Shown here: positions 29,850 through 61,588 of the stretch, in pieces
Layout of the letters: every line of letters begins with the position of its first letter
Position numbering within the stretch: the stretch's first letter is position 1
From: Haplodiscus bocki
Taxonomy: Eukaryota
DNA: 64,000 bases
Direction: 5' to 3'
Assembly: GCA_965655095.1 (NCBI GenBank)
Contig: OZ296658.1
Location: 53,320,001-53,384,000, forward strand
Translations under genes and position numbers: made by a program
Notes under the pieces: generated by a model
The model's database searches: none
What the model was told of the DNA's origin: nothing
What the model saw: only the letters and a program-made list of their open reading frames with translations

Positions 29850-30533
29850 ATGTGATTGAACGGAAGAATTTGTATTGGAAACCGGCTCATGAATATTTTT
29901 TTATCCTGTCTGCAACTTGCTTTTTTCGACGTCATCAGAGAGTCTAGTCATCTGGTGTAAGCGGTCCAAGTGGGCACTTTTTTGTAACATATTGGCAGCT
30001 ACTTGTTTATTTTAGCACTCTTTAAGGTTCAAAATGTTTCAACGTTGGTCTGAAAAACGAGCAACAGCCTTCCTAAAGGTTATGTCTCACATAACAATGT
30101 TGAGAGTATGAGACAGTGTGGCAGTGTATCAGGCGTCTTCGAAAATCTTGAATGTAGTAGTTTGGAAGTTGTTTTGAGGTCTTGATTGATATTGGCCGTT
30201 TTGAGAACTAGATTTTTTTGATGTAAGGTTTATTAGGGCACCTTTTTTTCATTTATTGACGTTGTGTACTGTGTAAATGCTTGAAACACTCGGCTGCATA
30301 ACGGCCAATCTAATAGGACATGATTGACAGACCAACTTTTCGATGAGGAGACACTGTGACTGTTACTTGTCTCAGTTCGACTTTTTCCATTTACCTTTTG
30401 CTAGACTTTTGGTGTTATGTTTCTAAAAGTGTCAATCGTTTGTCCGGTTAAGGTTTAAATGCCTTTCCGCACATTGTTTGTGATTCTTCTTTTTGACATC
30501 AACTGACAAGTCAGAATGTCTTGCGAAGTGCTG
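29850..30533 (+). repeat. Dispersed non-coding repeat, copy 2; target of the LTR-retrotransposon insertion
   Basis: Matches 21110-21860 up to ...AACTGACAAGTCA..TGCGAAGT, where similarity stops and TGTAAC begins. Confidence 0.8.
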
Positions 30534-31444
30534 TGTAACATTGCATGTTTTGAAGTTACTAAAGCAGGAACTGCTTCTCAGGAAGTTGACCAGAAAACAT
30601 TGACCTCTCTTATCTTTAAAGGAACTCTTTTTTAGATTTAAAGATTTCACTTTTGGGAATCAATGGGGGGCTATATTTAAGATAAACTACTCACTCTTTT
30701 CAACAATCAAAAAATATTTAGTATGAATAGCTTAGATTTTTAGGTTAATGGATTCAACAAAATTGCTGATTATCAACTATTGTTGATTTAAACTAACCAA
30801 ATTACTTTTTTTCTGAGAGTAGCTGTGAGTTGCCATTGGTTGCATGTCTTATCGCCGAACCTCGTATCTAATGCTCTCAGCAATAATCTAAAAGAAGAAA
30901 TGAACAGTAAAACCCGCTCCGGCTGAATGAAGATTCAGAAGTAGATGCCCATACAATATATGATGACAGTTCGTGTGCGATAACAAGCTACACAACGAAG
31001 ACCAGCAGCAGCACAAGACGAATGGATGCACTGTTTGGTCTGAAACATAACGAACAGGGCAGTGCGATCTTGTCAAAATGACAAGCAGCCTATATCCTAC
31101 TGCCGAAAAGTTTAACCTAATCTAGACGCCTACAACCTATTGGAGAAGGAAGGGACAAAACACCTACCTGGGCTAAAGCAATCCTATGATGCAGAAAGCC
31201 GCAGTGCTGATTTTCTGTTACTCCTGTTCGTGTTCCTAACCAAGGAAGCTTAACTTGGATGTAGATTGTTAGTTGCGCTGTGATTGTTTTCAAAACGGTT
31301 GTTTTCATCATTTCACAGATTTCATTGGGACGATTGTTCCACAGACTTCATTGGGAGCGCTTGATGACCTGAATTAATAATAAGGTATTAGTTGTGTTTT
31401 TTCTTTCATTCTCACTCATCATTTTCCGAAACTGAATCGTTTCA
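30534..31444 (+). mobile_element. LTR (~910 bp) of a Ty3/gypsy-type element, unit 1; repeated in every unit (e.g. 33764-34673)
   Basis: Starts TGTAAC where host-repeat similarity ends; ends GTTTCA/ATTTCA (imperfect inverted of TGTAAC); TATAAATA box in units 2-9; AATAAG + GT-rich tract near the 3' end; followed by PBS-like TGG and gag. Confidence 0.75.
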
Positions 31445-31506
31445 TTTAGCTCTCATCTTTTGGAAAACTCTCGCGAGTCGTAACTACGTAAATTCGTTTT
31501 GTGACA

Positions 31507-32734
31507 ATGGCAGCTAACGCACAATCAACAATTTCTGTTCCAAAGTACGGAGGAAGTTCAACTGGCAGTTGGACTGACTTTGAGTCCTTGTTTCGAAGTA
31601 TAGTTGATGTTACAGCAAACCAAGCAAACCCAATAGTCGGATTGTTGAAACTCCTTGAGAGATTCAGCATTAAAGTTTTCCCACACCTTAGATGAATACA
31701 CGAAAGGAAACTTAGAGTTAATAATCACAGCAGTGAAAAAACATTTTCGCAGCCCGAATTTGAGAGAATTTCGTCACATAAACTTAGAAAACTTGAAATA
31801 TAACTACAAAATAGAGTCTCCTGAGGAATTTTTAGTCAAATTTCAAATTTTAGCGACGAAATCTTATCAAAGACCAGCAGATCAACCAGTGGCAGCCATT
31901 TGACAATTCTGTGGAAAATGAGCAAGACATGGTTGAGAGAAAATTGGGCTCACGACAAGACAAAGCTTTGCTCACGAAGAGGGAAAGGCATATCATACGA
32001 ATATTCAAAAAAGCACTGCCAATTTTTATCAGACTCAAACTTCTAGAGGAGCCAGAAGATGCCACAATCAATGAATTGTGGACACAAGCCAGGCGAAAAC
32101 TGGTTTTTCGAGGGTTTAGCCCAATTGATGACTAGTCTAAGTTTGGATTCAATGAGATGAGTACAGGTAAGTGCAAAAAATTCCGAAAAATCCTGAACAA
32201 AATTACAGAAAACCAAATTTCTCGAAAACAGAATGAATACATTGACTGAAAAAAATAATCATCCGCAACAAGGCACATCCAGCCGAAACTTCGTTCAGAT
32301 TTTTGACCACAACGTAAATGAAGAGGAAATTCCGGAGGACGCTTTAATCAAATTCGTGGAAACACAAAATATCTTATAATAATCAAGGATCAAATAACTA
32401 CCAGAACCAAAATCAATGTAGATACGGAAACATTTTGAGAGGCAATTTTAGAGGCTGAAATAGTTATAGAGTTAACAATTACAGAGGACACAAAAGTGGA
32501 ATTTTTCAAACATTGAGAATAGAAATTGTAATTATCAACAATTTGATAATCAAAATGCTGAAACGACATTAAACACACGAATTATGTTATGACATATTGA
32601 GACAACAGCATTGATGCAAAAGGTTTGCTATCCTGTGGTTATCCTAAGCACACAGCAAAAAAGCTGAAGCGATAGGAAGAAGCAACTCACGAGTTGGAAA
32701 AGTTCCGTTCGACTCCCAGTCAAAAAACTACTGA
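31507..32734 (+). pseudogene. gag: Decayed gag (unit 1; repeated in all units)
   Basis: MAANAQSTISVPKYGGSSTGSWTDFESLF..LRDSALKF..ESPEEFLVK.. capsid-like region, an N/R/G-rich spacer, then a frameshifted CCHC knuckle (C..CGYPNHTAKK.); several stops and frameshifts. Confidence 0.8.
32722..32728 (+). promoter_or_regulatory. -1 ribosomal frameshift heptamer A AAA AAC at the gag/pol overlap
   Basis: Gag frame reads TCA AAA AAC TAC TGA, and the -1 frame stays open (KKLLTPHTSDSPEGCNLL); heptamer intact in units 1-8, mutated in unit 9. Confidence 0.7.
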
Positions 32735-35700
32735 CGCCACACACGTCAGATAGTCCAGAAGGCTGCAACCTTTTAATTTCAATGCACTACAAATCTAAAT
32801 GTTTCTTCTCCGGAACCAAATTTTTTAACCCAAAATGAACTTGAAGAAACCCCAATCTCTAAAAAAGATGAATCTCAGCATCCAGTAGTTTTGGAAATGG
32901 ACGCGTTCATTCTACTTGAAGGAGAAAATTTGACGTATTTACCGTTAAAGTTTGAAATTGACGTCAAGACGAAAGCAATAATTGACACAGGAGCTTTTGC
33001 TAGCGCCATGCCGGCAGATTTTGATGAAAAAAAGGGAAATGTCGCCGAATTGACTCTCAGAATTAAAGCAAGCTTTTTTTTAAATGTCAAAGTTGCATCA
33101 GGGCGCAATGTTAAAGTTCTTGACTGAATTGACGTGAAATTCAAAATTAATGAACATAAATTTGAGGATACATTCTTCATACTTCCGTCAATGAACAGTG
33201 TTTTCTTAGGCAAGCCGTTCTTTGGCAAACACTGTGTTGAAATTTGCCCGGGAGACAATATGCTTAAAATAACATAAATGACTTCCGAATTGACTGAAGT
33301 AACAACCCCTAGCGAAGGACGCGAAACTTTTCCCAAAAGACTATACCCATTTGTGATGAGCCAGAGAGTCATAATCAAACCTCAGGATCTGGAAATTGTA
33401 CAGACAAATGTAGATTTTCGGAAAAGATCAGAAGGACACACTGGAACGATTATCCCAGATGAAGAAATATTTTTTTTCAGAACATAGGTAATTTGCAAAA
33501 ACGTCCTCTTTTGGATCCGCAAAATAACGAAACCGAGAAGAAAATTTTTTCAGCACAATTTGACTGGTGGCGATTAGGAGACACTGTGACTGTTACTTGT
33601 CTCAGTTCGATTTTTTCGAACTACCTTTTGCTAGACATTTGGTGTACTGATTCTGAAAGTGTTAATCGTTTATCCGATTAAGGTTTAAATGCCTTTCCGC
33701 ACATTGTTTGTGAATGTTCTCTTTGACATCAACTGACAAGTCAGAATGTCTTGGGAAGTTTTGTGTAACATTGCATGTTTTGAAATTACTAAAGCAGGAA
33801 AGGCTTCTCAGGAATTTGCCCAGAAAACGTTGACCTCTTTTATCTTTAAAAGAACTCTCCACTAGTTCTAAATTTTTCACTACTGTCAATCAATGGGCCG
33901 CTATATTTAAGATAAACTACTCACTCCTATCAACAATCGAAAAATATTTAGTATAAATAGCATAGATTTTTAGGTTAATGGATTCAACAAAATTGCTGAT
34001 TATAAACCAATGTTGATATAAACTAACCAAATTACTTTTTTCTGAGACTAGCTGTGAGTTGCTATTGGTTGCAAGTCTTATCGACGAACCTCGTATCCAA
34101 TGCTCTCAGCAATAATCTCAAAGAAATGAACAGTAAAACCCGCTCCGGCTAAAAGAGGATTCAGAAGTAGATGCACATACAATATATGATGACAGATCGT
34201 GTGCGACAACAAGCTACACAGCGAAGACCAGCAGCAGCACAAGATGATTGGATCCAGTGTTTTGTGTGAAATATAACGAACAGGGCAGTGCGATCTTGTC
34301 AAAATGACAAGCAGCCTATATCCTACTGCCAAAAAGTTTAACCTAATCTAGACGCCTACAACCTATTGGAGAATGAAGGGACGAAACACCTACCTGAGCT
34401 AAAGCAATCCTATGATGCAGAAAGCAGCAGTGCTATTTTTCTGTTAGTCATGATCTTATTCCTGACCAAGGAAGCTTAACTTGGATGTAGTATATTGTTA
34501 GTTGCGCTGTGATTGTTTTCAAAACTGTTGTTCTCATCATTTCACAGATTTCATTGGGACGATTGTTCCACAGATTTCGATGGGAGCGCTTGATGACCTG
34601 AATTAATAATAAGGCATTAGTTGTGTTTTCACTTTCATTCGGCATCATCACTTTCCGAAACTGAATCATTTCATGTGGCTCTCATCTTTTGCGAAAATCT
34701 CGCGAATCGTAACGACTTAAATTCGTTTTGTAAATTTGGCAGCTAACGCACAATCAACAGTTTCTCTCCAAAGTACGCAGGACGTTCAACTGGTAGTTGG
34801 ACTGACTTTCGTTCTTTGTTTCGAAGTTCAGTTGATGTTACAGGACTCCAAGCAAACCAAAGAGTAGGATTCTTGAACTCCTTGAGAGATTCAGCACTAA
34901 ACTTTTTCCACACCACAGATGAAAACACGAAAGGAGACTTAGAGTTAACAATCACAACGTTGAAAAATCATTTTCGCAACCCGAATTTGAGAGAAATTCG
35001 TCACATAAACTTCGAAAACTCGAAATTTAACCACAAAACGTTGGAAATCTTGACATTTAACCACAGAAGAGTTTACTGAGGAATTTTTGGTCCAATCTCA
35101 AAATATAGCGACGAAATCTTATCAAAGACCAGCAGATCAACCAGTGGCACCCATTTGACAATACTGTGGAAAATGACCAAGACTGGGTTGAGAGAAAATC
35201 GTGCTAACCATAACAGACGAAGCTTTCCTCACGAAAAGGGAAAAGCATACCATACTAATATTCAAGGAAGCAACGCCAATTTCCATCAGACTCAAACTTC
35301 TAGAGGAGCCAGAAGATGCCACAATCAATGAATTGTAGACAGAAGCCAGGCAAAAACTGGTTTCGAGAGTTTTGCCCAATTGATGACTAGTCTAAGTTTG
35401 GATTTAATGAGATGAGTACAGGTTAGTGCAAAGAGTTCCGAACAGTCCTGACCAAAATGATAGAAAACCAAATTTCTCGAAAAAAGAATGAATACATTGA
35501 CTGAAAAAAAATACTCCTCCGCAATAAGGCACATCCGGCCAAAACTCGGTTCAGAATTTTGACCACAACGAAAATGAAGAGGAAATTCCGGAGGACGCTT
35601 TAATCAAAATCATGGAAACACAAAAGATCTTATAAAAATCGAGGATCGAATAACTCTACCTAAACCAAAATCAAGGTAGTTACGAAAACGTTTTTGGAGG

Positions 35701-35991
35701 CAATTTTCGAGATTGAAATGGTTATAGTGGTAACAATTACAGAGGACACAACAGTGGAATTTATTCAATTATGGACAGTAGATTTTGTAATAATTACCAA
35801 CAATTCAATGATCAAAATGCTCAAACGACATTAAACACACGAAATATACGAAATATAGTAGGACATATTGTGACAAGGGCATTGACGCAAAAGGTTTGCT
35901 CTCTTGTGGTTATCCTAATCACTTAGCAAAAAAGGTGAAGCGATAGGAAGAAGCAATTCACGAGTTGGAAAAGTTCCGTTCAACTCCCAGT

Positions 35992-37207
35992 CAAAAAACT
36001 ACTGATGCCACACACGTCAGGTAGTCCAGAAGGCTGCAACCTTTTAATTTCAATGCACTACAAATCTAAATGTTTCTTCACCGGAACTAATTTTTTTAAC
36101 CCAAAATGAACTTGAAGAAACCCCAATCCCTAAAAAAGATGAATCTCAGCATCCAGTAGATTTGGAAATGAACGCGTTCATTCTACTTGAAGGAGGAATT
36201 TTGACGTATTTACCGTTAAAGTTTGAAATTGACGTCAAGACGAAAGCAATAATTGACACAGGAGCTTTTGCTAGCGCCATGCCGGCAGATTTTGATGAAA
36301 AACAGGGAAATATCGCGGAATTCACTCTCAGAATTACAGCGAGCTTTTTTTTAAATGTCAAAGTTGCATCAGGGCGCCATGTTAAAGTTCTTGACTGAAT
36401 TGACGTCAAATTCAAAATTAATGAACAAAAATTTGAGAATACATGCTTCATACTTCCCTCAATGAACAGTGTTTTCTTAGGCAAGCCGTTCTTTCGAAAA
36501 TACGGTGTTGAATTTTGCCCGGGAGACAATATGCTTAAAATAACATAAATGACTTCCGAATTGACTGAAGTAACAACCCCTAGCGAAGGACGCGAAATTT
36601 TTCCTAAAAGACTATACCCATTTGTGATGAGCCAGAGAGTCATAATCAAACCTCAGGATCTGGAAATTGTACATACAAAAGTAGATTTTCGGAAAAGATC
36701 AGAAGGACACCCTGGAACGATTATCCCAGATGAAGAAATATACATCCCAGAAGAAAATAATACAGAATGAGACTTTCATCATCTGTTGTCACAGTTGGAA
36801 AACACAATACAGTTTCAGTTTTAGCAATCAATTTGAATGATCACGATCTAAGTTTCACAAACAACAAACAGGTTGCAGTTTTTCAATATCTCTCCCCGCC
36901 GGAAGAGGAGGAATTTATCGATATCGGGCCAGAAATTCTGGCACTCGTCAAAATGGAAAAGGCAGTAGTTTCCCGCGAGATTATTCAACTTATACGAATG
37001 CGAAAAACAAAAGCAGGAAAACAACCTCAACGCCCCTTTACCGAATATGATGAAATCTGGTTTCCTACGCCGGAAATATGTCAAAATCTTGTACCTTACT
37101 GAGGAAATTTTTTTCAGAACATAGGTAATTTGCAAAAACGTCCTCTTTTGGATCCGCAAAATAACGAAACCGAGAAGAAAATTTTTTCAGCACAATTTGA
37201 CTGGTGG
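35992..37207 (+). pseudogene. pol: 5' pol fragment: retropepsin protease and spacer, truncated before RT (unit 2; repeated in units 1-8)
   Basis: KAIIDTGAFASAMP (D-T-G active site) ... FFILPSMNSVFLGKPF, then a beta-rich region VIIKPQ...LSSSVVTV...VLAINL...NKQVAVF, ending at AQFDW; no RT, RNase H or integrase in any unit. Confidence 0.85.
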
Positions 37208-40200
37208 CGATTAGGAGACACTGTGACTGTTACTTGTCTCAGTTCGATTTTTTCGAACTACCTTTTGCTAGACATTTGGTGTACTGATTCTGAAAGTGTT
37301 AATCGTTTATCCGATTAAGGTTTAAATGCCTTTCCGCACATTGTTTGTGAATGTTCTCTTTGACATCAACTGACAAGTCAGAATGTCTTGCGAAGTTTTG
37401 TGTAACATTGCATGTTTTGAAGTTACTAAAGCAGGAAAGGCTTCTCAGGAATTTGCCCAGAAAACGTTGACCTCTTTTATCTTTAAAAGAACTCTCCACT
37501 AGTTCTAAATTTTTCACTACTGTCAATCAATGGGCCGCTATATTTAAGATAAAATACTCACTCCTATCAACAATCGAAAAATATTTAGTATAAATAGCAT
37601 AGATTTTTAGGTTAATGGATTCAACAAAATTGCTGATTATAAACCAATGTTGATATAAACTAACCAAATTACTTTTTTCTGAGACTAGCTGTGAGTTGCT
37701 ATTGGTTGCAAGTCTTATCGACGAACCTCGTATCCAATGCTCTCAGCAATAATCTCAAAGAAATGAACAGTAAAACCCGCTCCGGCTAAAAGAGGATTCA
37801 GAAGTAGATGCACATACAATATATGATGACAGATCGTGTGCGACAACAAGCTACACAGCGAAGACCAGCAGCAGCACAAGATGATTGGATCCAGTGTTTT
37901 GTGTGAAATATAACGAACAGGGCAGTGCGATCTTGTCAAAATGACAAGCAGCCTATATCCTACTGCCAAAAAGTTTAACCTAATCTAGACGCCTACAACC
38001 TATTGGAGAATGAAGGGACGAAACACCTACCTGAGCTAAAGCAATCCTATGATGCAGAAAGCAGCAGTGCTATTTTTCTGTTAGTCATGATCTTATTCCT
38101 GACCAAGGAAGCTTAACTTGGATGTAGTATATTGTTAGTTGCGCTGTGATTGTTTTCAAAACTGTTGTTCTCATCATTTCACAGATTTCATTGGGACGAT
38201 TGTTCCACAGATTTCGATGGGAGCGCTTGATGACCTGAATTAATAATAAGGCATTAGTTGTGTTTTCACTTTCATTCGGCATCATCACTTTCCGAAACTG
38301 AATCATTTCATGTGGCTCTCATCTTTTGCGAAAATCTCGCGAATCGTAACGACTTAAATTCGTTTTGTAAATTTGGCAGCTAACGCACAATCAACAGTTT
38401 CTCTCCAAAGTACGCAGGACGTTCAACTGGTAGTTGGACTGACTTTCGTTCTTTGTTTCGAAGTTCAGTTGATGTTACAGGACTCCAAGCAAACCAAAGA
38501 GTAGGATTCTTGAACTCCTTGAGAGATTCAGCACTAAACTTTTTCCACACCACAGATGAAAACACGAAAGGAGACTTAGAGTTAACAATCACAACGTTGA
38601 AAAATCATTTTCGCAACCCGAATTTGAGAGAAATTCGTCACATAAACTTCGAAAACTCGAAATTTAACCACAAAACGTTGGAAATCTTGACATTTAACCA
38701 CAGAAGAGTTTACTGAGGAATTTTTGGTCCAATCTCAAAATATAGCGACGAAATCTTATCAAAGACCAGCAGATCAACCAGTGGCACCCATTTGACAATA
38801 CTGTGGAAAATGACCAAGACTGGGTTGAGAGAAAATCGTGCTAACCATAACAGACGAAGCTTTCCTCACGAAAAGGGAAAAGCATACCATACTAATATTC
38901 AAGGAAGCAACGCCAATTTCCATCAAACTCAAACTTCTAGAGGAGCCAGAAGATGCCACAATCAATGAATTGTAGACAGAAGCCAGGCAAAAACTGGTTT
39001 CGAGAGTTTTGCCCAATTGATGACTAGTCTAAGTTTGGATTTAATGAGATGAGTACAGGTTAGTGCAAAGAGTTCCGAACAGTCCTGACCAAAATGATAG
39101 AAAACCAAATTTCTCGAAAAAAGAATGAATACATTGACTGAAAAAAAATACTCCTCCGCAATAAGGCACATCCGGCCAAAACTCGGTTCAGAATTTTGAC
39201 CACAACGAAAATGAAGAGGAAATTCCGGAGGACGCTTTAATCAAAATCATGGAAACACAAAAGATCTTATAAAAATCGAGGATCGAATAACTCTACCTAA
39301 ACCAAAATCAAGGTAGTTACGAAAACGTTTTTGGAGGCAATTTTCGAGATTGAAATGGTTATAGTGGTAACAATTACAGAGGACACAACAGTGGAATTTA
39401 TTCAATTATGGACAGTAGATTTTGTAATAATTATCAACAATTCAATGATCAAAATGCTCAAACGACATTAAACACACGAAATATACGAAATATAGTAGGA
39501 CATATTGTGACAAGGGCATTGACGCAAAAGGTTTGCTCTCTTGTGGTTATCCTAATCACTTAGCAAAAAAGGTGAAGCGATAGGAAGAAGCAATTCACGA
39601 GTTGGAAAAGTTCCGTTCAACTCCCAGTCAAAAAACTACTGACGCCACACACGTCAGGTAGTCCAGAAGGCTGCAACCTTTTAATTTCAATGCACTACAA
39701 ATCTAAATGTTTCTTCACCGGAACTAATTTTTTTAACCCAAAATGAACTTGAAGAAACCCCAATCCCTAAAAAAGATGAATCTCAGCATCCAGTAGATTT
39801 GGAAATGAACGCGTTCATTCTACTTGAAGGAGGAATTTTGACGTATTTACCGTTAAAGTTTGAAATTGACGTCAAGACGAAAGCAATAATTGACACAGGA
39901 GCTTTCGCTAGCGCCATGCCGGCAGATTTTGATGAAAAACAGGGAAATATCGCGGAATTCACTCTCAGAATTACAGCCAGCTTTTTTTTAAATGTCAAAG
40001 TTGCATCAGGGCGCCATGTTAAAGTTCTTGACTGAATTGACGTCAAATTCAAAATTAATGAACAAAAATTTGAGAATACATGCTTCATACTTCCCTCAAT
40101 GAACAGTGTTTTCTTAGGCAAGCCGTTCTTTCGAAAATACGGTGTTGAATTTTGCCCGGGAGACAATATGCTTAAAATAACATAAATGACTTCCGAATTG

Positions 40201-41949
40201 ACTGAAGTAACAACCCCTAGCGAAGGACGCGAAATTTTTCCTAAAAGACTATACCCATTTGTGATGAGCCAGAGAGTCATAATCAAACCTCAGGATCTGG
40301 AAATTGTACATACAAAAGTAGATTTTCGGAAAAGATCAGAAGGACACCCTGGAACGATTATCCCAGATGAAGAAATATACATCCCAGAAGAAAATAATAC
40401 AGAATGAGACTTTCATCATCTGTTGTCACAGTTGGAAAACACAATACAGTTTCAGTTTTAGCAATCAATTTGAATGATCACGATCTAAGTTTCACAAACA
40501 ACAAACAGGTTGCAGTTTTTCAATATCTCTCCCCGCCGGAAGAGGAGGAATTTATCGATATCGGGCCAGAAATTCTGGCACTCGTCAAAATGGAAAAGGC
40601 AGTAGTTTCCCGCGAGATTATTCAACTTATACGAATGCGAAAAACAAAAGCAGGAAAACAACCTCAACGCCCCTTTACCGAATATGATGAAATCTGGTTT
40701 CCTACGCCGGAAATATGTCAAAATCTTGTACCTTACTGAGGAAATTTTTTTCAGAACATAGGTAATTCGCAAAAACGTCCTCTTTTGGATCCGCAAAATA
40801 ACGAAACCGAGAAGAAAATTTTTTCAGCACAATTTGACTGGTGGCGATTAGGAGACACTGTGACTGTTACTTGTCTCAGTTCGATTTTTTCGAACTACCT
40901 TTTGCTAGACATTTGGTGTACTGATTCTGAAAGTGTTAATCGTTTATCCGATTAAGGTTTAAATGCCTTTCCGCACATTGTTTGTGAATGTTCTCTTTGA
41001 CATCAACTGACAAGTCAGAATGTCTTGCGAAGTTTTGTGTAACATTGCATGTTTTGAAGTTACTAAAGCAGGAAAGGCTTCTCAGGAATTTGCCCAGAAA
41101 ACGTTGACCTCTTTTATCTTTAAAAGAACTCTCCACTAGTTCTAAATTTTTCACTACTGTCAATCAATGGGCCGCTATATTTAAGATAAAATACTCACTC
41201 CTATCAACAATCGAAAAATATTTAGTATAAATAGCATAGATTTTTAGGTTAATGGATTCAACAAAATTGCTGATTATAAACCAATGTTGATATAAACTAA
41301 CCAAATTACTTTTTTCTGAGACTAGCTGTGAGTTGCTATTGGTTGCAAGTCTTATCGACGAACCTCGTATCCAATGCTCTCAGCAATAATCTCAAAGAAA
41401 TGAACAGTAAAACCCGCTCCGGCTAAAAGAGGATTCAGAAGTAGATGCACATACAATATATGATGACAGTTCGTGTGCGACAACAAGCTACACAGCGAAG
41501 ACCAGCAGCAGCACAAGATGATTGGATCCAGTGTTTTGTGTGAAATATAACGAACAGGGCAGTGCGATCTTGTCAAAATGACAAGCAGCCTATATCCTAC
41601 TGCCAAAAAGTTTAACCTAATCTAGACGCCTACAACCTATTGGAGAATGAAGGGACGAAACACCTACCTGAGCTAAAGCAATCCTATGATGCAGAAAGCA
41701 GCAGTGCTATTTTTCTGTTAGTCCTGATCTTATTCCTAACCAAGGAAGCTTAACTTGGATGTAGTATATTGTTAGTTGCGCTGTGATTGTTTTCAAAACG
41801 GTTGTTCTCATCATTTCACAGATTTCATTGGGACGATTGTTCCACAGATTTCGATGGGAGCGCTTGATGACCTGAATTAACAATAAGGCATTAGTTGTGT
41901 TTTCACTTTCATTCGGCATCATCACTTTCCGCAACTGAATCATTTCATT

Positions 41950-41960
41950 TGGCTCTCATC
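41950..41960 (+). promoter_or_regulatory. Primer-binding-site-like motif TGGCTCTCATC (unit 4; equivalent position in all units)
   Basis: TGG 2 nt after the LTR-terminal CA; 8/11 identity to the tRNA-Lys-type PBS TGGCGCCCAAC; primer assignment tentative. Confidence 0.5.
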
Positions 41961-50900: not shown

Positions 50901-53900
50901 AACCTCAGGATCTGGAAATTGTACAGACAAATGTAGATTTTCGGAAAAGATCAGAAGGACACACTGGAACGATTATCCCAGATGAAGAAATATACATCCC
51001 AGAAGAAAATAATACAGAATGAGACTTTCATCATCTGTTGTCACAGTTGGAAAACACAATACAGTTTCAGTTTTAGCAATCAATTTGAATGATCACGATC
51101 TAAGTTTCACAAACAACAAACAGGTTGCAGTTTTTCAATATCTCTCCCCGCCGGAAGAGGAGGAATTTATCGATATCGGGCCAGAAATTCTGGCACTCGT
51201 CAAAATGGAAAAGGCAGTAGTTTCCCGCGAGATTATTCAACTTATACGAATGCGAAAAACAAAAGCAGGAAAACAACCTCAACGCCCCTTTACCGAATAT
51301 GATAAAATCTGGTTTCCTACGCCGGAAATATGTCAAAATCTTAACAACTCATGTACCTTACTGAGGAAATTTTTTTCAGAACATAGGTAATTTGCAAAAA
51401 CGTCTTCTTTTGGATCCGCAAAATAACGAAACCGACAAGAAAATTTTTTCAGCACAATTTGACTGGTGGCGATTAGGAGACACTGTGACTGTTACTTGTC
51501 TCAGTTCGATTTTTTCGAACTACCTTTTGCTAGACATTTGGTGTACTGATTCTGAAAGTGTTAATCGTTTATCCGATTAAGGTTTAAATGCCTTTGCGCA
51601 CATTGTTTGTGAATGTTCTCTTTGACATCAACTGACAAGTCAGAATGTCTTGCAAAGTTTTGTGTAACATTGCATGTTTTGAAGTTACTAAAGCAGGAAA
51701 GGCTTCTCTGGAGTTTGCCCAGAAAACGTTGACCTCTTTTATCTTTAAAAGAACTCTCCATTAGTTCTAATTTTTTCACTACTGGGAATCAATGGGCCGC
51801 TATATTTAAGATAAACTACTCACTCCTATCAACAATCAAAAATTATTTAGTATAAATAGCATAGATTTTTAGGTTAATGGGTTCAACAAAATTGCTGATT
51901 ATAAACCAATGTTGATATAAACTAACCAAATTACTTTTTTCTGAGACTAGCTGTGAGTTGCCATCGGTTGCAAATCTTATCGACGAATCTCGTATCCAAT
52001 GCTCTCAGCAATAATCTCAAAGAAATGAACAGTAAAACCCGCTCCGGCTAAAAGAGGATTCAGAAGTAGATGCACATACAATATATGATGACAGTTCGTG
52101 TGCGACAACAAGCTACACAGGGAAGACCAGCAGCAGCACAAGATGAATGGATCCAGTGTTTGGTGTGAAATATAACGAACAGGGCAGTGCGATCTTGTCA
52201 AAATGACAAGCAGCCTATATCCTACTGCCAAAAAGTTTAACCTAATCTAGACGCCTACAACCTATTGGAGAATGAAGGGACGAAACACCTACCTGAGCTA
52301 AAGCAATCCTATGATGCAGAAAGCAGCAGTGCTATTTTTCTGTTAGTCCTGTTCGTATTCCTAACCAAGGAAGCTTAACTTGGATGTAGTAGATTGTTAG
52401 TTGCGCTGTGATTGTTTTCAAAACGGTTGTTCTCATCATTTCACAGATTTCATTGGGATGATTGTTCCACAGATTTCGATGGGAGCGCTTGATGACCTGA
52501 ATTAATAATAAGGCATTAGTTGTGTTTTTACTTTCATTCGGCATCATTACTTTCCGAAACTGAATCATTTCATGTGGCTCTCATCTTTTGCGAAAATCTC
52601 GCGAATCGTAACGACTTATATTCGTTTTGTAAATTTGGCAGCTAACGCACAATCAACAGTTTCTCTCCAAAGTACGCAGGAAGTTCAACTGGTAGTTGGA
52701 CTGACTTTCATTCTTTGTTTCGAAGTTCAGTTGATGTTACAGGACTCCAAGCAAACCAAAGAGTAGGATTCTTGAACTCCTTGAGAGATTCAGCACTAAA
52801 CTTTTTCCACACCACAGATGAAAACACGAAAGGAGACTTAGAGTTAACAATCACAACGTTGAAAAATCATTTTCGCAACCCGAATTTGAGATAAATTCGT
52901 CACATAAACTTCGAAAACTCGAAATTTAACCACAAAACGTTGGAAAACTTGACATTTAACCACAGAAGAGTTTACTGAGGAATTTTTGGTCCAATCTCAA
53001 AATTTAGCGACGAAATCTTATCAAAGACCAGCAGATCAACCGGTGGCACCCATTTGACAATACTGTGGAAAATGACCAAGACTGGGTTGAGAGAAAATCG
53101 TGCTAACGATAACAGACGAAGCTTTCCTCACGAAAAGGGAAAAACATACCATACGAATATTCAAGGAAGCAACGCCAATTTCCATCAGACTCAAACTTCT
53201 GGAGGAGCCAGAAGATGCCACAATCAATGAATTGTAGACAGAAGCCAGGCGAAAACTGGTTTTTCGAGAGTTTTGCCCAATTGATGACTAGTCTAAGTTT
53301 GGATTTAATGAGATGAGTACAGGTAAGTGCAAAAAGTTCCGAACAGTCCTGACCAAAATGATAGAAGACCAAATTTCCCGAAAAAAGAATGAATACATTG
53401 ACTGAAAAAAATACTCCTCCGCAATAAGGCACATCCAGCCAAAACTCGGTACAGAATTTTGAGCACAACGAAAATGAAGAGGAAATTCCGGAGGACGCTT
53501 CAATCAGAATCGTGGAAACACAAAAGATCTTATAATTAATAAAGATTTTGTAATAATTATCAACAATTCAATGATCAAAATGCTGAAACGACATTAAACA
53601 CACGAAATATAGTAGGACATATTGTGACAACAGCATTGTCGCAAAAGGTTTGCTATCTTGTGGTTATCCTAATCACACAGCAAAAAGGTGAAGCGATAGG
53701 AAGAAGCAATTCACGAGTTGGAAAAGTTCCGTTCAACTCCCAGTCAAAAAACTACTGACGCCACACACGTAAGATAGTCCAGAAGGCTGCAACCTTTTAA
53801 TTTCAATGCACTACAAATCTAAATGTTTCTTCAACGGAACCAAATTTTTCAACTCAAAATGAACTTGAAGAAACCCCAATCCCTAAAAAAGGCGAATCTC

Positions 53901-56900
53901 AGCATCCAGTAGATTTGGAAATGAACGCGTTCTTTCTACTTGAAGGAGAAAATTTGACGTATTTACCGTTAAAGTTTGAAAATGACGTCAAGGGGAAAGC
54001 AATAATTGACACAGGAGCTTTTGCTAGCCCCATGCCGGCAGAGTTTGATGGGAAACGGAAATGTCGCGGAATTCACTCTCAGAATTACAGCGAGTTTTTT
54101 TTAATGTCAAAGTTGCATCAGGGCGCAATGTTAAAGTTCTTGACTGAATTGACGTCAAATTCAAAATTAATGAACATAAATTTGAGGATACATTCTTCAT
54201 ACTTCCCTCAATGAACAGTGTTTTCTTAGGCAAGCCGTTCTTTGGCAAACACGGTGTTGAAATTTGCCCGGGAGACAATATGCTTAAAATAACATAAATG
54301 ACTTCCGAATTGACTGAAGTAACAACCCCTAGCGAAGGACGCGAAATTTTTCCTAAAAGACTATACCCATTTGTGATGAGCCAGAGAGTCATAATCAAAC
54401 CTCAGGATCTGGAAATTGTACAGACAAATGTAGATTTTCGGAAAGGATCAGAAGGACACACTGGAACGATTATCCCAGATGAAGAAATATACATCCCAGA
54501 AGAAAATAATACAGAATGAGACTTTCATCATCTGTTGTCACAGTTGGAAAACACAATACAGTTTCAGTTTTAGCAATCAATTTGAATGATCACGATCTAA
54601 GTTTCACAAACAACAAACAGGTTGCAGTTTTTCAATATCTCTCCCGCCGGAAGAGGAGGAATTTATCGATATCGGGCCAGAAATTCTGGCACTCGTCAAA
54701 ATGGAAAAGGCAGTAGTTTCCCGCGAGATTATTCAACTTATACGAATGCGAAAAACAAAAGCAGGAAAACAACCTCAACGCCCCTTTACCGAATATGATA
54801 AAATCTGGTTTCCTACGCCGGAAATATGTCAAAATCTTAACAACTCATGTACCTTACTGAGGAAATTTTTTTCAGAACATAGGTAATTTGCAAAAACGTC
54901 CTCTTTTGGATCCGCAAAATAACGAAACCGACAAGAAAATTTTTTCAGCACAATTTGACTGGTGGCGATTAGGAGACACTGTGACTGTTACTTGTCTCAG
55001 TTCGATTTTTTCGAACTACCTTTTGCTAGACATTTGGTGTACTGATTCTGAAAGTGTTAATCGTTTATCCGATTAAGGTTTAAATGCCTTTGCGCACATT
55101 GTTTGTGAATGTTCTCTTTGACATCAACTGACAAGTCAGAATGTCTTGCAAAGTTTTGTGTAACATTGCATGTTTTGAAGTTACTAAAGCAGGAAAGGCT
55201 TCTCTGGAGTTTGCCCAGAAAACGTTGACCTCTTTTATCTTTAAAAGAACTCTCCATTAGTTCTAATTTTTTCACTACTGGGAATCAATGGGCCGCTATA
55301 TTTAAGATAAACTACTCACTCCTATCAACAATCAAAAATTATTTAGTATAAATAGCATAGATTTTTCGGTTAATGGGTTCAACAAAATTGCTGATTATAA
55401 ACCAATGTTGATATAAACTAACCAAATTACTTTTTTCTGAGACTAGCTGTGAGTTGCCATCGGTTGCAAATCTTATCGACGAATCTCGTATCCAATGCTC
55501 TCAGCAATAATCTCAAAGAAATGAACAGTAAAACCCGCTCCGGCTAAAAGAGGATTCAGAAGTAGATGCACATACAATATATGATGACAGTTCGTGTGCG
55601 ACAACAAGCTACACAGGGAAGACCAGCAGCAGCACAAGATGAATGGATCCAGTGTTTGGTGTGAAATATAACGAACAGGGCAGTGCGATCTTGTCAAAAT
55701 GACAAGCAGCCTATATCCTACTGCCAAAAAGTTTAACCTAATCTAGACGCCTACAACCTATTGGAGAATGAAGGGACGAAACACCTACCTGAGCTAAAGC
55801 AATCCTATGATGCAGAAAGCAGCAGTGCTATTTTTCTGTTAGTCCTGTTCGTATTCCTAACCAAGGAAGCTTAACTTGGATGTAGTAGATTGTTAGTTGC
55901 GCTGTGATTGTTTTCAAAACGGTTGTTCTCATCATTTCACAGATTTCATTGGGACGATTGTTCCACAGATTTCGATGGGAGCGCTTGATGACCTGAATTA
56001 ATAATAAGGCATTAGTTGTGTTTTTACTTTCATTCGGCATCATTACTTTCCGAAACTGAATCATTTCATGTGGCTCTCATCTTTTGCGAAAATCTCGCGA
56101 ATCGTAACGACTTATATTCGTTTTGTAAATTTGGCAGCTAACGCACAATCAACAGTTTCTCTCCAAAGTACGCAGGAAGTTCAACTGGTAGTTGGACTGA
56201 CTTTCATTCTTTGTTTCGAAGTTCAGTTGATGTTACAGGACTCCAAGCAAACCAAAGAGTAGGATTCTTGAACTCCTTGAGAGATTCAGCACTAAACTTT
56301 TTCCACACCACAGATGAAAACACGAAAGGAGACTTAGAGTTAACAATCACAACGTTGAAAAATCATTTTCTCAACCCGAATTTGAGATAAATTCGTCACA
56401 TAAACTTCGAAAACTCGAAATTTAACCACAAAACGTTGGAAAACTTGACATTTAACCACAGAAGATTTTACTGAGGAATTTTTGGTCCAATCTCAAAATT
56501 TAGCGACGAAATCTTATCAAAGACCAGCAGATCAACCGGTGGCACCCATTTGACAATACTGTGGAAAATGACCAAGACTGGGTTGAGAGAAAATCGTGCT
56601 AACGATAACAGACGAAGCTTTCCTCACGAAAAGGGAAAAGCATACCATACGAATATTCAAGGAAGCAACGCCAATTTCCATCAGACTCAAACTTCTAGAG
56701 GAGCCAGAAGATGCCACAATCAATGAATTGTAGACAGAAGTCAGGCGAAAACTGGTTTTTCGAGAGTTTTGCCCAATTGATGACTAGTCTAAGTTTGGAT
56801 TTAATGAGATGAGTACAGGTAAGTGCAAAAAGTTCCGAACAGTCCTGACCAAAATGATAGAAGACCAAATTTCCCGAAAAAAAGAATGAATACATTGACT

Positions 56901-59900
56901 GAAAAAAATACTCCTCCGCAATAAGGCACATCCAGCCAAAACTCGGTACAGAATTTTGAGCACAACGAAAATGAAGAGGAAATTCCGGAGGACGCTTCAA
57001 TCAGAATCGTGGAAACACAAAAGATCTTATAATTAATAAAGATTTTGTAATAATTATCAACAATTCAATGATCAAAATGCTGAAACGACATTAAACACAC
57101 GAAATATAGTAGGACATATTGTGACAACAGCATTGTCGCAAAAGGTTTGCTATCTTGTGGTTATCCTAATCACACAGCAAAAAGGTGAAGCGATAGGAAG
57201 AAGCAATTCACGAGTTGGAAAAGTTCCGTTCAACTCCCAGTCAAAAAACTACTGACGCCACACACGTAAGATAGTCCAGAAGGCTGCAACCTTTTAATTT
57301 CAATGCACTACAAATCTAAATGTTTCTTCAACGGAACCAAATTTTTCAACTCAAAATGAACTTGAAGAAACCCCAATCCCTAAAAAAGGCGAATCTCAGC
57401 ATCCAGTAGATTTGGAAATGAACGCGTTCTTTCTACTTGAAGGAGAAAATTTGACGTATTTACCGTTAAAGTTTGAAAATGACGTCAAGGGGAAAGCAAT
57501 AATTGACACAGGAGCTTTTGCTAGCCCCATGCCGGCAGAGTTTGATGGGAAACGGAAATGTCGCGGAATTCACTCTCAGAATTACAGCGAGTTTTTTTTA
57601 ATGTCAAAGTTGCATCAGGGCGCAATGTTAAAGTTCTTGACTGAATTGACGTCAAATTCAAAATTAATGAACATAAATTTGAGGATACATTCTTCATACT
57701 TCCCTCAATGAACAGTGTTTTCTTAGGCAAGCCGTTCTTTGGCAAACACGGTGTTGAAATTTGCCCGGGAGACAATATGCTTAAAATAACATAAATGACT
57801 TCCGAATTGACTGAAGTAACAACCCCTAGCGAAGGACGCGAAATTTTTCCTAAAAGACTATACCCATTTGTGATGAGCCAGAGAGTCATAATCAAACCTC
57901 AGGATCTGGAAATTGTACAGACAAATATAGATTTTCGGAAAGGATCAGAAGGACACACTGGAACGATTATCCCAGATGAAGAAATATACATCCCAGAAGA
58001 AAATAATACAGAATGAGACTTTCATCATCTGTTGTCACAGTTGGAAAACACAATACAGTTTCAGTTTTAGCAATCAATTTGAATGATCACGATCTAAGTT
58101 TCACAAACAACAAACAGGTTGCAGTTTTTCAATATCTCTCCCCGCCGGAAGAGGAGGAATTTATCGATATCGGGCCAGAAATTCTGGCACTCGTCAAAAT
58201 GGAAAAGGCAGTAGTTTCCCGCGAGATTATTCAACTTATACGAATGCGAAAAACAAAAGCAGGAAAACAACCTCAACGCCCCTTTACCGAATATGATAAA
58301 ATCTGGTTTCCTACGCCGGAAATATGTCAAAATCTTAACAACTCATGTACCTTACTGAGGAAATTTTTTTCAGAACATAGGTAATTTGCAAAAACGTCCT
58401 CTTTTGGATCCGCAAAATAACGAAACCGACAAGAAAATTTTTTCAGCACAATTTGACTGGTGGCGATTAGGAGACACTGTGACTGTTACTTGTCTCAGTT
58501 CGATTTTTTCGAACTACCTTTTGCTAGACATTTGGTGTACTGATTCTGAAAGTGTTAATCGTTTATCCGATTAAGGTTTAAATGCCTTTGCGCACATTGT
58601 TTGTGAATGTTCTCTTTGACATCAACTGACAAGTCAGAATGTCTTGCAAAGTTTTGTGTAACATTGCATGTTTTGAAGTTACTAAAGCAGGAAAGGCTTC
58701 TCTGGAGTTTGCCCAGAAAACGTTGACCTCTTTTATCTTTAAAAGAACTCTCCATTAGTTCTAATTTTTTCACTACTGGGAATCAATGGGCCGCTATATT
58801 TAAGATAAACTACTCACTCCTATCAACAATCAAAAATTATTTAGTATAAATAGCATAGATTTTTAGGTTAATGGGTTCAACAAAATTGCTGATTATAAAC
58901 CAATGTTGATATAAACTAACCAAATTACTTTTTTCTGAGACTAGCTGTGAGTTGCCATCGGTTGCAAATCTTATCGACGAACCTCGTATCCAATGCTCTC
59001 AGCAATAATCTCAAAGAAATGAACAGTAAAACCCGCTCCGGCTAAAAGAGGATTCAGAAGTAGATGCACATACAATATATGATGACAGTTCGTGTGCGAC
59101 AACAAGCTACACAGGGAAGACCAGCAGCAGCACAAGATGAATGGATCCAGTGTTTGGTGTGAAATATAACGAACAGGGCAGTGCGATCTTGTCAAAATGA
59201 CAAGCAGCCTATATCCTACTGCCAAAAAGTTTAACCTAATCTAGACGCCTACAACCTATTGGAGAATGAAGGGACGAAACACCTACCTGAGCTAAAGCAA
59301 TCCTATGATGCAGAAAGCAGCAGTGCTATTTTTCTGTTAGTCCTGTTCGTATTCCTAACCAAGGAAGCTTAACTTGGATGTAGTAGATTGTTAGTTGCGC
59401 TGTGATTGTTTTCAAAACGGTTGTTCTCATCATTTCACAGATTTCATTGGGACGATTGTTCCACAGATTTCGATGGGAGCGCTTGATGACCTGAATTAAT
59501 AATAAGGCATTAGTTGTGTTTTTACTTTCATTCGGCATCATTACTTTCCGAAACTGAATCATTTCATGTGGCTCTCATCTTTTGCGAAAATCTCGCGAAT
59601 CGTAACGACTTATATTCGTTTTGTAAATTTGGCAGCTAACGCACAATCAACAGTTTCTCTCCAAAGTACGCAGGAAGTTCAACTGGTAGTTGGACTGACT
59701 TTCATTCTTTGTTTCGAAGTTCAGTTGATGTTACAGGACTCCAAGCAAACCAAAGAGTAGGATTCTTGAACTCCTTGAGAGATTCAGCACTAAACTTTTT
59801 CCACACCACAGATGAAAACACGAAAGGAGACTTAGAGTTAACAATCACAACGTTGAAAAATCATTTTCTCAACCCGAATTTGAGATAAATTCGTCACATA

Positions 59901-61588
59901 AACTTCGAAAACTCGAAATTTAACCACAAAACGTTGGAAAACTTGACATTTAACCACAGAAGAGTTTACTGAGGAATTTTTGGTCCAATCTCAAAATTTA
60001 GCGACGAAATCTTATCAAAGACCAGCAGATCAACCGGTGGCACCCATTTGACAATACTGTGGAAAATGACCAAGACTGGGTTGAGAGAAAATCGTGCTAA
60101 CGATAACAGACGAAGCTTTCCTCACGAAAAGGGAAAAGCATACCATACGAATATTCAAGGAAGCAACGCCAATTTCCATCAGACTCAAACTTCTAGAGGA
60201 GCCAGAAGATGCCACAATCAATGAATTGTAGACAGAAGTCAGGCGAAAACTGGTTTTTCGAGAGTTTTGCCCAATTGATGACTAGTCTAAGTTTGGATTT
60301 AATGAGATGAGTACAGGTAAGTGCAAAAAGTTCCGAACAGTCCTGACCAAAATGATAGAAGACCAAATTTCCCGAAAAAAAGAATGAATACATTGACTGA
60401 AAAAAATACTCCTCCGCAATAAGGCACATCCAGCCAAAACTCGGTACAGAATTTTGACCACAACGAAAATGAAGAGGAAATTCCGGAGGACGCTTCAATC
60501 AGAATCGTGGAAACACAAAAGATCTTATCAAAATCAAGGATCGAATAACTCTACCGTAACCAAAATCAAGGTAGTTACGGAAACATTTTTGGAGGCAATT
60601 TTCGAGATTGAAATGGTTATGTGGTAACAATTACAGAGGACACAACAGTGGAATTTATTCAATTATGGACAGTAGATTTTGTAATAATTATCAACAATTC
60701 AATGATCAAAATGCTCAAACGACATTAAACACACGAAACATAGTAGGACATATTGTGACAAGAGCATTGACGCAAAAGGTTTGCTATCTTGTGGTTATCC
60801 TAATCACACAGCAAAAAAGGTGAAGCGATAGGAAGAAGCAATTCACGAGGTGGAAAAGTTCCGTTCAACTCCCAGTCAGAAAACTACTGACGCCACACAC
60901 GTCAGACAGTCCAGAAGGCTCTAGCCTTTTAATTTCAATGCACTACAAATCTAATTGTTTCCTCACCAGAACCAAAATTATTAACCCAAAATGAACTTGA
61001 AGAAACCCCAATCCTTAATAAAGATGAATCTCAGCATCCAGTAGATTTGCAAACGAACGCGTTAGTAGTATATAGGCGAGCAAGACAGCCTGTGGGGGAT
61101 GAAGACCCTCATTTTTAACATAGGCTATAGGACCCAAGAGCCGAGAACTATCTTCACCCCCTGTTTTGATATTTTCCAGGGGCCCTGAGGCGGCCGGCGG
61201 AGACTTTAATAGGTATTTTTTCGGCATAGGCCGAGGCGGGCGGCGGAAAATTGAGGCGGAGACTTTATCATGTCAGAATATTGTTCATCCTATTGCGTTT
61301 TAACTCCGCGTCCAATAGGAATAGGGAAAGATTCCCAGTAATATACAAATGTATTAACAGACAAAACGAACACGAATAAAGTTGTTCAGAGAAACACACG
61401 TGCACACGAATGCGAACATCATTTAGTAGTCTTCTTTGTTTTACGAGAGCTGGAATTGATGGACGACATCGCGGAACGATAACGTGCAGCAGTGTAATCG
61501 GATGGTAGCTCACGTTATTATGTGGCGGTGTTCTATTGAACGAGGTGCTGAAAATAACGACTGAATACACAATACTCAGCAGTCATTC

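What the first reader, a model, noticed from the sequence alone, without database searches (positions are those of the whole stretch)
30341..61063. 31-kb macrosatellite built from the 5' half of an LTR retrotransposon plus a piece of its insertion-site DNA
Seen: nine head-to-tail ~3.5-kb units, each host repeat (~190 bp)-LTR-PBS-gag-frameshift-protease-truncated pol, all sharing one junction (AQFDW coding sequence fused to CGATTAGGAGACACTG). The ~190-bp piece is recognisably the dispersed repeat also found at ~21670-21860, so it is flanking DNA and not retroelement. Inference: the array came from one non-homologous duplication spanning the insertion boundary, then DNA-level amplification (unequal exchange or rolling circle), not retrotransposition. 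This looks like a retroelement turning into a large-unit satellite inside a gene region.
Basis: partly seen in the sequence, partly recalled or inferred. Interest (0 to 1): 0.8.

Follow-up and report, generated by a model that had tools for sequence, protein, structure and literature searches.

The report
Tandem array from dead gypsy retrotransposon
A 3.5-kb stretch, made of the front half of one long-dead jumping gene plus 190 bases of the DNA beside it, was copied head to tail nine times on the spot; this is a very clearly readable but ordinary case of repeat DNA born from a transposon.

Summary
Window 30341-61063 is eight complete units (3230-3637 bp) and one partial unit in head-to-tail order. 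All share one junction, which occurs nowhere else in the 1.5-Gb genome.

Each unit has these parts:
- the 3' 190 bp of a ~370-bp dispersed repeat
- a 423-bp LTR
- a leader
- a gag-like region
- a protease region
- a pol stub that ends before RT

- **Unit 9** is not truncated. A 16.5-kb TIR-bounded insertion splits it, and behind that it runs on into the only RT/RNase H/integrase remnant of the region.
- **Junction:** it has 2 bp of microhomology (CG).
- **DNA-level copying:** all units share two in-frame stops and a frameshift, so a dead copy was amplified as DNA.
- **Stepwise growth:** neighbouring units are 99.5-99.8% alike. The edge units are 91-93% alike and mosaic, which fits unequal exchange over time.
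- **Second junction:** a rearrangement junction lies 22 kb downstream.
- **Other arrays:** two independent arrays of the same topology exist in this family, on C3 and C8.

Copy number could not be proven, because only short contigs of reads were available.

The scan has already noted many like macrosatellites (hAT, LINE, MULE) on other DNA of this genome. This is a new member of a known kind, of modest interest.

The parts
30160..30530 (+). Complete copy of a ~370-bp dispersed repeat. Its 3' 190 bp (30341-30530) are the 'host' piece of every unit. Its 5' 180 bp occur once, upstream of unit 1.
   Evidence: dispersed copies match query 60-430 of 30100-30533 at 72-78%.
30341..33570 (+). Unit 1, the old left-edge unit (3230 bp). 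It is 88-93% like the inner units over offsets 1-2400 and 98.5% like unit 7 over offsets 2778-3172. It has a 376-bp deletion at offset 3172.
33571..44472 (+). Units 2, 3 and 4 in the long form (3637, 3637, 3628 bp). Units 2 and 3 are 99.8% alike; unit 4 is 97.9% like both.
44473..58463 (+). Units 5-8 in the short form (3496-3499 bp). They share a 137-bp deletion at offset 2084 and are 98.8-99.8% alike.
58464..61063 (+). Unit 9, 5' part (offsets 1-2600, long form). Offsets 1-1980 are 99.7-100% like unit 7; the rest is 91-94%. It continues behind the insertion at G000:C11:53397569.
37163..37252 (+). Example of the inter-unit junction: the pol stub ...GACTGGTGG, then CG, then ATTAGGAGACACTG of the flanking repeat. 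The CG is present in both parents, giving 2 bp of microhomology.
37402..37824 (+). LTR of unit 3 (TGTAAC...CATACA, 423 bp). The same part sits at offsets 195-617 of every unit.
   Evidence: homology among independent copies begins at TGTAAC. LTR-only hits end at query 418-424.
38832..39637 (+). gag-like region of unit 3 (offsets about 1625-2430), with many stops and frameshifts.
   Evidence: tblastn with an ORF of dispersed copy L032. No Pfam family was found.
39778..40550 (+). Protease region of unit 3, with a DTGA motif at 39892-39903. Two in-frame stops (40033-40035 TGA, 40183-40185 TAA) and a frameshift near offset 3197 are shared by all units that keep those positions; the frameshift site is deleted in unit 1.
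40551..40844 (+). pol stub of unit 3, ending before the RT domain at the array junction.
   Evidence: dispersed copies and the in-situ parent run on into RT here.
61064..64000 (.). Left end of a 16.5-kb insertion that splits unit 9. Its ~180-bp terminal inverted repeats are 91% alike, its termini read AG...CT, and its 6-bp target duplication reads CGCGTT/CGCGTC. It ends at G000:C11:53397568.
21482..21857 (+).

Best explanation
A Ty3/gypsy-type LTR retrotransposon inserted right beside a copy of a ~370-bp dispersed repeat and then decayed. A 3.64-kb segment was later duplicated in tandem. It runs from the middle of that repeat (window 30341) to a point in pol just upstream of RT. The end-to-start joint used 2 bp of microhomology (CG), pointing to end joining or a replication template switch. 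This step is inferred from the junction. Out-of-register exchange or conversion between units then raised the copy number to nine in several steps and kept the inner units alike, while the two edge units drifted. This step is inferred from the pattern of identities. A 16.5-kb TIR element landed in the last unit and has marked the right limit of homogenisation since then. Nothing indicates a function: the array is decaying, non-coding DNA.
For: - Nine head-to-tail units share one junction, and the junction 90-mer is found only here in 1.5 Gb.
- Left-flank continuity: the 5' half of the same repeat copy precedes unit 1.
- Right continuity: behind the insertion, unit 9 runs through the junction point into RT, RNase H and integrase. 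These occur only once in 94 kb, at extended coordinates 78946-81140.
- CG is present in both parental sequences at the joint.
- Two in-frame stops are shared by all units, including unit 1 and the parent remainder; one frameshift is shared by every unit that keeps that site, which is deleted in unit 1.
- Neighbouring units are 99.5-99.8% alike, blocks about 97%, edge units 91-94%.
- Unit 1 is sister to all the others.
- Both edge units are mosaics with sharp switches in identity.
- Units differ by indels that define blocks, which an assembly error would not create.
- Contigs of reads from two samples bridge the left boundary.
- Arrays of the same topology from related elements exist on C3 (3 units of 7286 bp, 99.8-99.9%) and C8 (2 units of 3456 bp, 99.5%), with different breakpoints.
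Against: - Copy number is not confirmed by spanning long reads. Only short contigs of reads were available, and their word depth (4-7 times the flank's) is a weak measure.
- The target-site duplication of the parent element cannot be checked, because its 3' LTR is rearranged.
- The distal copy at extended coordinate 82999 groups with the inner units, not with unit 1. The full order of events at the locus is therefore not resolved.
- Unequal crossing-over, gene conversion and replication slippage cannot be told apart from the sequence alone.
Confidence: 0.85

Rival explanations
1. An extrachromosomal circle closed at the CG microhomology was copied by rolling-circle replication, and the concatemer went back into its own locus by homologous recombination.
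For: One circle junction would give exactly one shared inter-unit junction. The near-identical block of units 5-8 (98.8-99.8%) could be such a burst. This route is one of the three listed for TE tandems in PMC5932611.
Against: Unit ages are hierarchical, not equal: 99.8%, 97% and 91%. Edge units are mosaics with gradients of identity. Flank and parent element are continuous with the first and last units, as a plain in-place duplication predicts.
Confidence: 0.08
2. The array is an assembly artefact, with one or two real copies over-expanded by the assembler.
For: There are no spanning long reads, and the depth of contigs is not a copy number.
Against: - Units differ by 0.2-10% and by block-specific indels of 137 and 376 bp.
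- The window contains no N.
- Array-type contigs carry 4-7 times the word depth of unique-flank contigs in the runs laid.
- The junction is absent from any other contig.
Confidence: 0.03
3. The unit is a non-autonomous mobile element, or the array comes from LTR-LTR recombination or from repeated insertion into one site.
For: Those routes are common for LTR elements (PMC5932611). The downstream piece at extended coordinate 82999 looks at first like an LTR shared by two internal regions.
Against: - The junction exists at one locus only.
- It joins pol to flanking repeat DNA, not LTR to LTR, and carries no target-site duplication.
- All units carry the same lesions, apart from the frameshift site deleted in unit 1.
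- The LTR at 82999 is itself interrupted by 74 bp copied from the flank at 30228-30301.
Confidence: 0.02

Closest known systems
CRM1TR / CRM4TR, maize tandem repeats derived from centromeric Ty3/gypsy retrotransposons (PMC3648361)
   Same: The monomer is a contiguous 5' piece of one LTR retrotransposon. It started by illegitimate recombination, was then amplified locally, and is homogenised within a locus. In both cases, independent arrays end at nearly the same point of the element.
   Different: The maize monomers are 0.7-0.8 kb of LTR plus UTR only. They hold no flanking host DNA and no gag or protease, they are centromeric, and no parent is left in place. Here the unit is 3.5 kb, crosses the insertion boundary, and the parent's remaining part still follows the last unit.
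Tandem transposons as seeds of satellites in Drosophila (PMC5932611) and the two-stage model cited there (first a small tandem, then unequal exchange)
   Same: A transposon dimer arises by a rare event and is expanded by out-of-register exchange. The arrays are local and variable.
   Different: None of that paper's three routes fits: shared-LTR recombination, rolling circle, or double insertion with a target-site duplication in the joint. The first step here is a non-homologous tandem duplication from pol into the upstream flank.
Other macrosatellites noted by this scan in the same genome (for example s1-366627: a hAT copy plus about 680 bp of flank, about 32 units). These are unchecked AI notes.
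   Same: One dead transposon insertion plus a piece of its neighbouring DNA is copied head to tail at one locus.
   Different: The transposon class is different. This array is smaller and older at its edges, and its parent element and a dated insertion are still attached.
D4Z4-type macrosatellites of mammals (from general knowledge, not tested here)
   Same: A kilobase-scale unit (3.3 kb) contains a retro-derived coding remnant, and copy number is set by unequal exchange.
   Different: D4Z4 carries an intact, expressed ORF and has known chromatin effects. Here every unit is riddled with stops, and no expression data were available.

Membership tests
TE-derived macrosatellite formed by segmental tandem duplication plus unequal exchange | Head-to-tail units that all share one novel junction | tested here: met
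   eight identical junction 16-mers at periods of 3496-3637 bp (3230 bp for unit 1).
TE-derived macrosatellite formed by segmental tandem duplication plus unequal exchange | Junction confined to one locus | tested here: met
   the full 90-mer matches only at the eight array junctions. All other hits are half matches.
TE-derived macrosatellite formed by segmental tandem duplication plus unequal exchange | Parental sequence continuous with the first and last unit | tested here: met
   for the left flank; the last unit runs on into RT, RNase H and integrase.
TE-derived macrosatellite formed by segmental tandem duplication plus unequal exchange | Units share inactivating lesions, showing DNA-level copying of a dead copy | tested here: met
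   two in-frame stops are present in all units tested, including unit 1 and the parent remainder. One frameshift is present in every unit that keeps that site, which is deleted in unit 1.
TE-derived macrosatellite formed by segmental tandem duplication plus unequal exchange | Neighbouring units most alike; edge units most diverged and mosaic | tested here: met
TE-derived macrosatellite formed by segmental tandem duplication plus unequal exchange | Copy number confirmed by molecules that span the array | not testable with these tools
   only short contigs of reads were served. They bridge the left boundary, but depth is only suggestive.
Tandem LTR retrotransposons sharing an LTR (ectopic LTR-LTR recombination) | Unit is one LTR plus the whole internal region, with the joint inside an LTR | tested here: not met
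   the joint links pol to the flanking repeat. RT, RNase H and integrase are absent from the units.
Double-insertion tandem | Complete element termini separated by a target-site duplication | tested here: not met
   the 3' side of the joint is truncated pol, and 190 bp of flank lie between it and the LTR.
Rolling-circle concatemer | Units of equal age (star-like tree) | tested here: not met
   Searches show a hierarchy from 99.8% down to 91%. A burst cannot be excluded for units 5-8 alone.
Ty3/gypsy LTR retrotransposon (the source element) | pol order RT, RNase H, integrase, with the matching Pfam domains | tested here: met
   RVT_1, RT_RNaseH, Integrase_H2C2 and rve in dispersed relatives L039 and L032; the same proteins match the in-situ parent remainder in that order, with stops.
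Ty3/gypsy LTR retrotransposon (the source element) | LTRs with TG...CA ends, a target-site duplication and a PBS | tested here: inconclusive
   The 5' LTR (TGTAAC...ACA, 423 bp) is defined. The parent's 3' LTR is rearranged, so no TSD can be read. The PBS was not verified.
Mobile non-autonomous element | Dispersed, TSD-flanked copies that carry the unit's junction | tested here: not met

The most novel reading that the evidence does not exclude
This genome may have an unusually active, sequence-independent process of kilobase-scale, microhomology-joined tandem duplication. One large gypsy family alone shows three independent arrays that cross the element's 5' boundary, and two of the three breakpoints in the element lie about 65 bp apart. 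If that clustering is real, the region just upstream of RT, or the 5' end of these elements, would be a preferred site of fork stalling or breakage that seeds satellites.
Probability: 0.12. Interest if true: 0.55.

Novelty: new member of a known kind. Interest (0 to 1): 0.3.

Why it matters
Transposon pieces are a recognised source of satellite DNA, but the first step is rarely preserved. Here almost the whole history can be read at one locus:
- the untouched flank
- the 2-bp microhomology joint
- the dead parent element still attached to the last unit
- an insertion that dates and limits homogenisation
- mosaic edge units
- blocks of very young copies

That makes it a good teaching and modelling case for the two-stage birth of satellites, and one data point for a genome-wide census in a genome that seems rich in such arrays. 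It does not reveal a new mechanism or a function.

Tried and rejected
- **Pfam on unit ORF pieces.** The open stretches of the units gave nothing above threshold, only a weak DUF1759 hit at E 0.01. The ORF fragments of the parent remainder gave nothing at all. Domains were therefore assigned by nucleotide and tblastn homology to more intact dispersed copies.
- **LTR pairs.** No LTR pairs were found within the 10-kb loci of dispersed copies. The family turned out to be about 14-15 kb long, judged from a 3' marker segment lying about 14 kb downstream of many 5' ends.
- **Fetching more genome sequence.** The gap at extended coordinates 74001-76068 and the 3' ends of dispersed copies were therefore not read.
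- **Breakpoint hot spot.** DNA folds of the pol region around the breakpoints in three copies are no more stable than shuffles (z -0.4, +1.0, -0.6). The recurrence of arrays that cross the 5' boundary is also expected in part, because my query was the 5' half.
- **Polinton identity of the 16.5-kb insertion.** The termini, 6-bp TSD and size fit, but its ORFs gave only C2H2 zinc fingers and otherwise no Pfam hits. It is not confirmed here.
- **Copy number from reads.** Only contigs were served, so depth is not a copy number.
- **Transposing-unit, LTR-LTR recombination and double-insertion readings.** All were rejected on the anatomy of the junction.
Full report
**Coordinates.** The window is G000:C11:53320001-53384000 of a 1.5-Gb animal genome. 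Positions above 64000 are "extended window coordinates", meaning the C11 coordinate minus 53,320,000. They were read from loci L037, L012, L046, L001 and L038. Two gaps remained unread, at 74001-76068 and 80101-80180.

**1.

A self-comparison of the window shows head-to-tail units starting at 30341, 33571, 37208, 40845, 44473, 47972, 51470, 54966 and 58464, with the last ending at 61063. The window has no N. The unit lengths fall into four groups:

| Units | Length (bp) |
|---|---|
| 1 | 3230 |
| 2, 3, 4 | 3637, 3637, 3628 |
| 5, 6, 7, 8 | 3499, 3498, 3496, 3498 |
| 9 (partial) | 2600 |

- A 90-mer across the joint matches in full at these eight places only in the whole genome. Every other hit covers only the element half or only the repeat half.

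**2. Anatomy of a unit**

- **Bases 1-190** are the 3' half of a ~370-bp dispersed repeat. The family has more than 1000 first-look candidates, and the scored copies are 72-78% alike.
- **The copy at the array** is complete, at 30160-30530. Its 5' 180 bp occur once, directly upstream of unit 1. The array's left breakpoint at 30341 therefore lies inside that repeat copy.
- **The element starts at TGTAAC.** Independent copies on C1, C8 and C11 begin to be alike exactly there, at offset 195.
- **The LTR is 423 bp, TG...CA.** LTR-only hits in the genome end at offset about 611-617.
- **Behind the LTR** come about 1 kb of leader, a gag-like region (offsets about 1625-2430), a protease region (about 2571-3343, with a DTGA motif at 39892-39903 in unit 3) and a pol stub that ends at 3637.
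- **Family.** More intact dispersed relatives, 67-75% alike, carry RVT_1, RT_RNaseH, Integrase_H2C2 and rve in that order, so this is a Ty3/gypsy-type family.
- **Size of the family.** A 3' marker segment lies about 14 kb downstream of the 5' end in at least ten copies, so the family is large, about 14-15 kb.
- **Limits.** The units themselves are too broken for Pfam. I did not verify a PBS.

**3. The parent element is still there**

Unit 9 stops at offset 2600 because a 16.5-kb insertion (61064-77568) splits it.
- The insertion's ~180-bp terminal inverted repeats are 91% alike.
- Its ends read AG...CT.
- The flanks repeat 6 bp, CGCGTT and CGCGTC.

At 77569 the element resumes at offset 2603. 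It runs through the point where all other units jump back to the flank, and continues colinear with the family reference through RT, RNase H and integrase to about 81470.

Proteins of these three domains match the 94 kb examined only once, at 78946-81140, with stops and frameshifts. The array is therefore (flank190 + element 195-3637) repeated, with the last repeat being the original insertion itself.

**4. How the first joint was made**

- The parent reads ...GACTGGTGG-CG-TCCAGCC.
- The flank reads ...CCAACTTTT-CG-ATGAGGAG.
- The joint reads ...GACTGGTGG-CG-ATTAGGAG.

The two parental sequences share only the dinucleotide CG. This is a non-homologous or microhomology joint, as made by end joining or a replication template switch.

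**5. Copying was at the DNA level, from a dead copy**

Read against ORFs of more intact relatives, every unit has the same two in-frame stops in the protease region. In unit 3 these are 40033-40035 TGA and 40183-40185 TAA. They include the oldest pieces, unit 1 and the parent remainder. The same frameshift near offset 3197 is present in every unit that keeps that site, which is deleted in unit 1.

I only compared the copies.

**6. Growth in steps**

Pairwise identities between units:

| Comparison | Identity (%) |
|---|---|
| unit 2 vs 3 | 99.8 |
| unit 7 vs 8 | 99.8 |
| unit 5 vs 6 | 99.5 |
| between the blocks | about 97 |
| unit 1 vs the rest | 91-92 |
| parent remainder behind the insertion vs the rest | 92-94 |

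- Units 5-8 share a 137-bp deletion that units 2-4 and 9 lack.
- In a tree rooted with dispersed copies, unit 1 is sister to all the others, with support 100/99.
- Unit 9 is a mosaic. It is 99.7-100% like unit 7 up to offset about 1980, and 91-94% from there to the insertion.
- Unit 1 is a mosaic too. It is 88-93% like the inner units over most of its length, but 98.5% like unit 7 at offsets 2778-3172.
- This is the pattern expected from repeated out-of-register exchange or conversion inside an array whose edges take part less. It does not fit a single rolling-circle burst.
- Homogenisation stops at the 16.5-kb insertion. The insertion's own terminal repeats have diverged by 9%, so it is old, and the inner units kept turning over after it landed.
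- The 5' LTRs and the 96-bp rest of the 3' LTR are only 82-85% alike. This suggests the element was already old when first duplicated, but the sample is small.

**7. A second rearrangement**

At 82999 the parent's 3' LTR starts but breaks off after 96 bp. Two pieces follow.
- First come 74 bp that match window 30228-30301 at 89%. The next best match in the genome is 80%. This is flank DNA from upstream of the present array.
- Then come LTR offset about 570 onward, the leader and gag, up to offset 1906.
- The right-hand joint of the 74-bp piece shows a few bases of microhomology (GCATAA against GCAATAA).

The simplest reading is a second, larger head-to-tail duplication running from the upstream flank to the 3' LTR, later cut down by deletions. 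A multi-step template switch is an alternative.

Its element part groups with units 2-9, not with unit 1. The order of events is therefore not fully resolved.

**8. The same thing happened elsewhere in this family**

- **C3.** Three units of 7286 bp, 99.8-99.9% alike, each consist of 3.95 kb of upstream DNA plus the element's first ~3.4 kb. The third unit runs on into RT and integrase. The joint has 1 bp of microhomology and lies 60-70 bp upstream of the point equivalent to ours.
- **C8.** Two units of 3456 bp, 99.5% alike, each consist of 231 bp of upstream DNA plus an internally deleted 5' part. The breakpoint is about 900 bp further into pol, and the last copy again runs on.
- **Caution.** My query was the 5' half of the element, so arrays of this sort were the ones I could find. 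Three of three crossing the 5' boundary is not significant. The breakpoint region shows no unusual DNA structure.

**9. Reads**

Only contigs of four runs from two samples of one study were available.
- In all four runs a 435-445-bp contig bridges the left boundary at 30341.
- Contigs of the array type carry roughly 4-7 times the word depth of unique-flank contigs in the three runs of one sample, and less in the other.
- The tool warns that such depth is not a copy number, so this is weak support.
- The divergence between units and the block-specific indels are the stronger argument against an assembly artefact.

**10. Comparison with what is known**

- Satellites that arise from LTR, gag or pol pieces of LTR retrotransposons are a recognised class (PMC12628747).
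- The maize CRM1TR and CRM4TR repeats were explained by illegitimate recombination followed by local amplification. Their two independent monomer ends also lie within 12 nt of each other (PMC3648361).
- The three routes given for transposon tandems in Drosophila are shared-LTR recombination, rolling circle and double insertion (PMC5932611). None describes the first step here, which is a plain segmental duplication across the insertion boundary. The second step, unequal exchange, is the classical one.
- The scan's earlier notes list many like arrays in this same genome, from hAT, LINE, MULE and gene fragments. I did not check those notes.

**Verdict.** The finding is a real, very well preserved but mechanistically ordinary member of a known kind, with no sign of function.

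Noticed in passing
window 14540-14935 and 15137-16579 (+): Two open stretches carry the two halves of a homeodomain (Pfam PF00046 positions 9-46 and 45-56). This looks like a homeobox gene with an intron inside the homeobox, about 14 kb upstream of the array.
   Followed up: partly
window 61064-64000, continuing to G000:C11:53397568 (L037, L012): A 16.5-kb insertion has ~180-bp inverted ends (91% alike), AG...CT termini and a 6-bp target duplication. Its size and ends are Polinton-like, but its ORFs gave only C2H2 zinc fingers (L037 1072-2655, minus strand) and otherwise no Pfam hits.
   Followed up: partly
window 61589-61938: A short tandem repeat (period 123 with a 56-bp sub-period, about 3 copies) lies inside the left part of that insertion.
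   Followed up: no
G000:C3:24819785-24841640 (L034, L009, L011, L007, L035): A second macrosatellite of the same gypsy family: three units of 7286 bp, 99.8-99.9% alike, each 3.95 kb of upstream DNA plus the element's 5' 3.4 kb. The last unit runs on into RT and integrase, and the joint has 1 bp of microhomology.
   Followed up: partly
G000:C8:57820347-57827260 approx. (L036): A tandem duplication of 3456 bp (99.5% alike) consists of 231 bp of flank plus an internally deleted 5' part of a related element. The last copy continues into the rest of pol.
   Followed up: partly
L001 1319-2868 (G000:C11:53402999-53404548): A chimeric LTR: 96 bp of the LTR start, then 74 bp copied from the flank at window 30228-30301 (89% alike; next best in the genome 80%), then the LTR end, leader and gag to offset 1906. 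This marks a second rearrangement at the locus.
   Followed up: yes
L001 458-700 and about 30 places genome-wide: A conserved segment lies about 850 bp upstream of the 3' LTR and about 14 kb downstream of the 5' end in many copies. The family is therefore about 14-15 kb long, with several kb between integrase and the 3' LTR that the copy in this window lacks.
   Followed up: partly
window 23507-24200 and L001/L038 (G000:C11:53405298-53405986): An inverted pair of a 694-bp repeat, 94.5% alike, flanks the whole region at a distance of about 61 kb. It is probably a young dispersed element.
   Followed up: no
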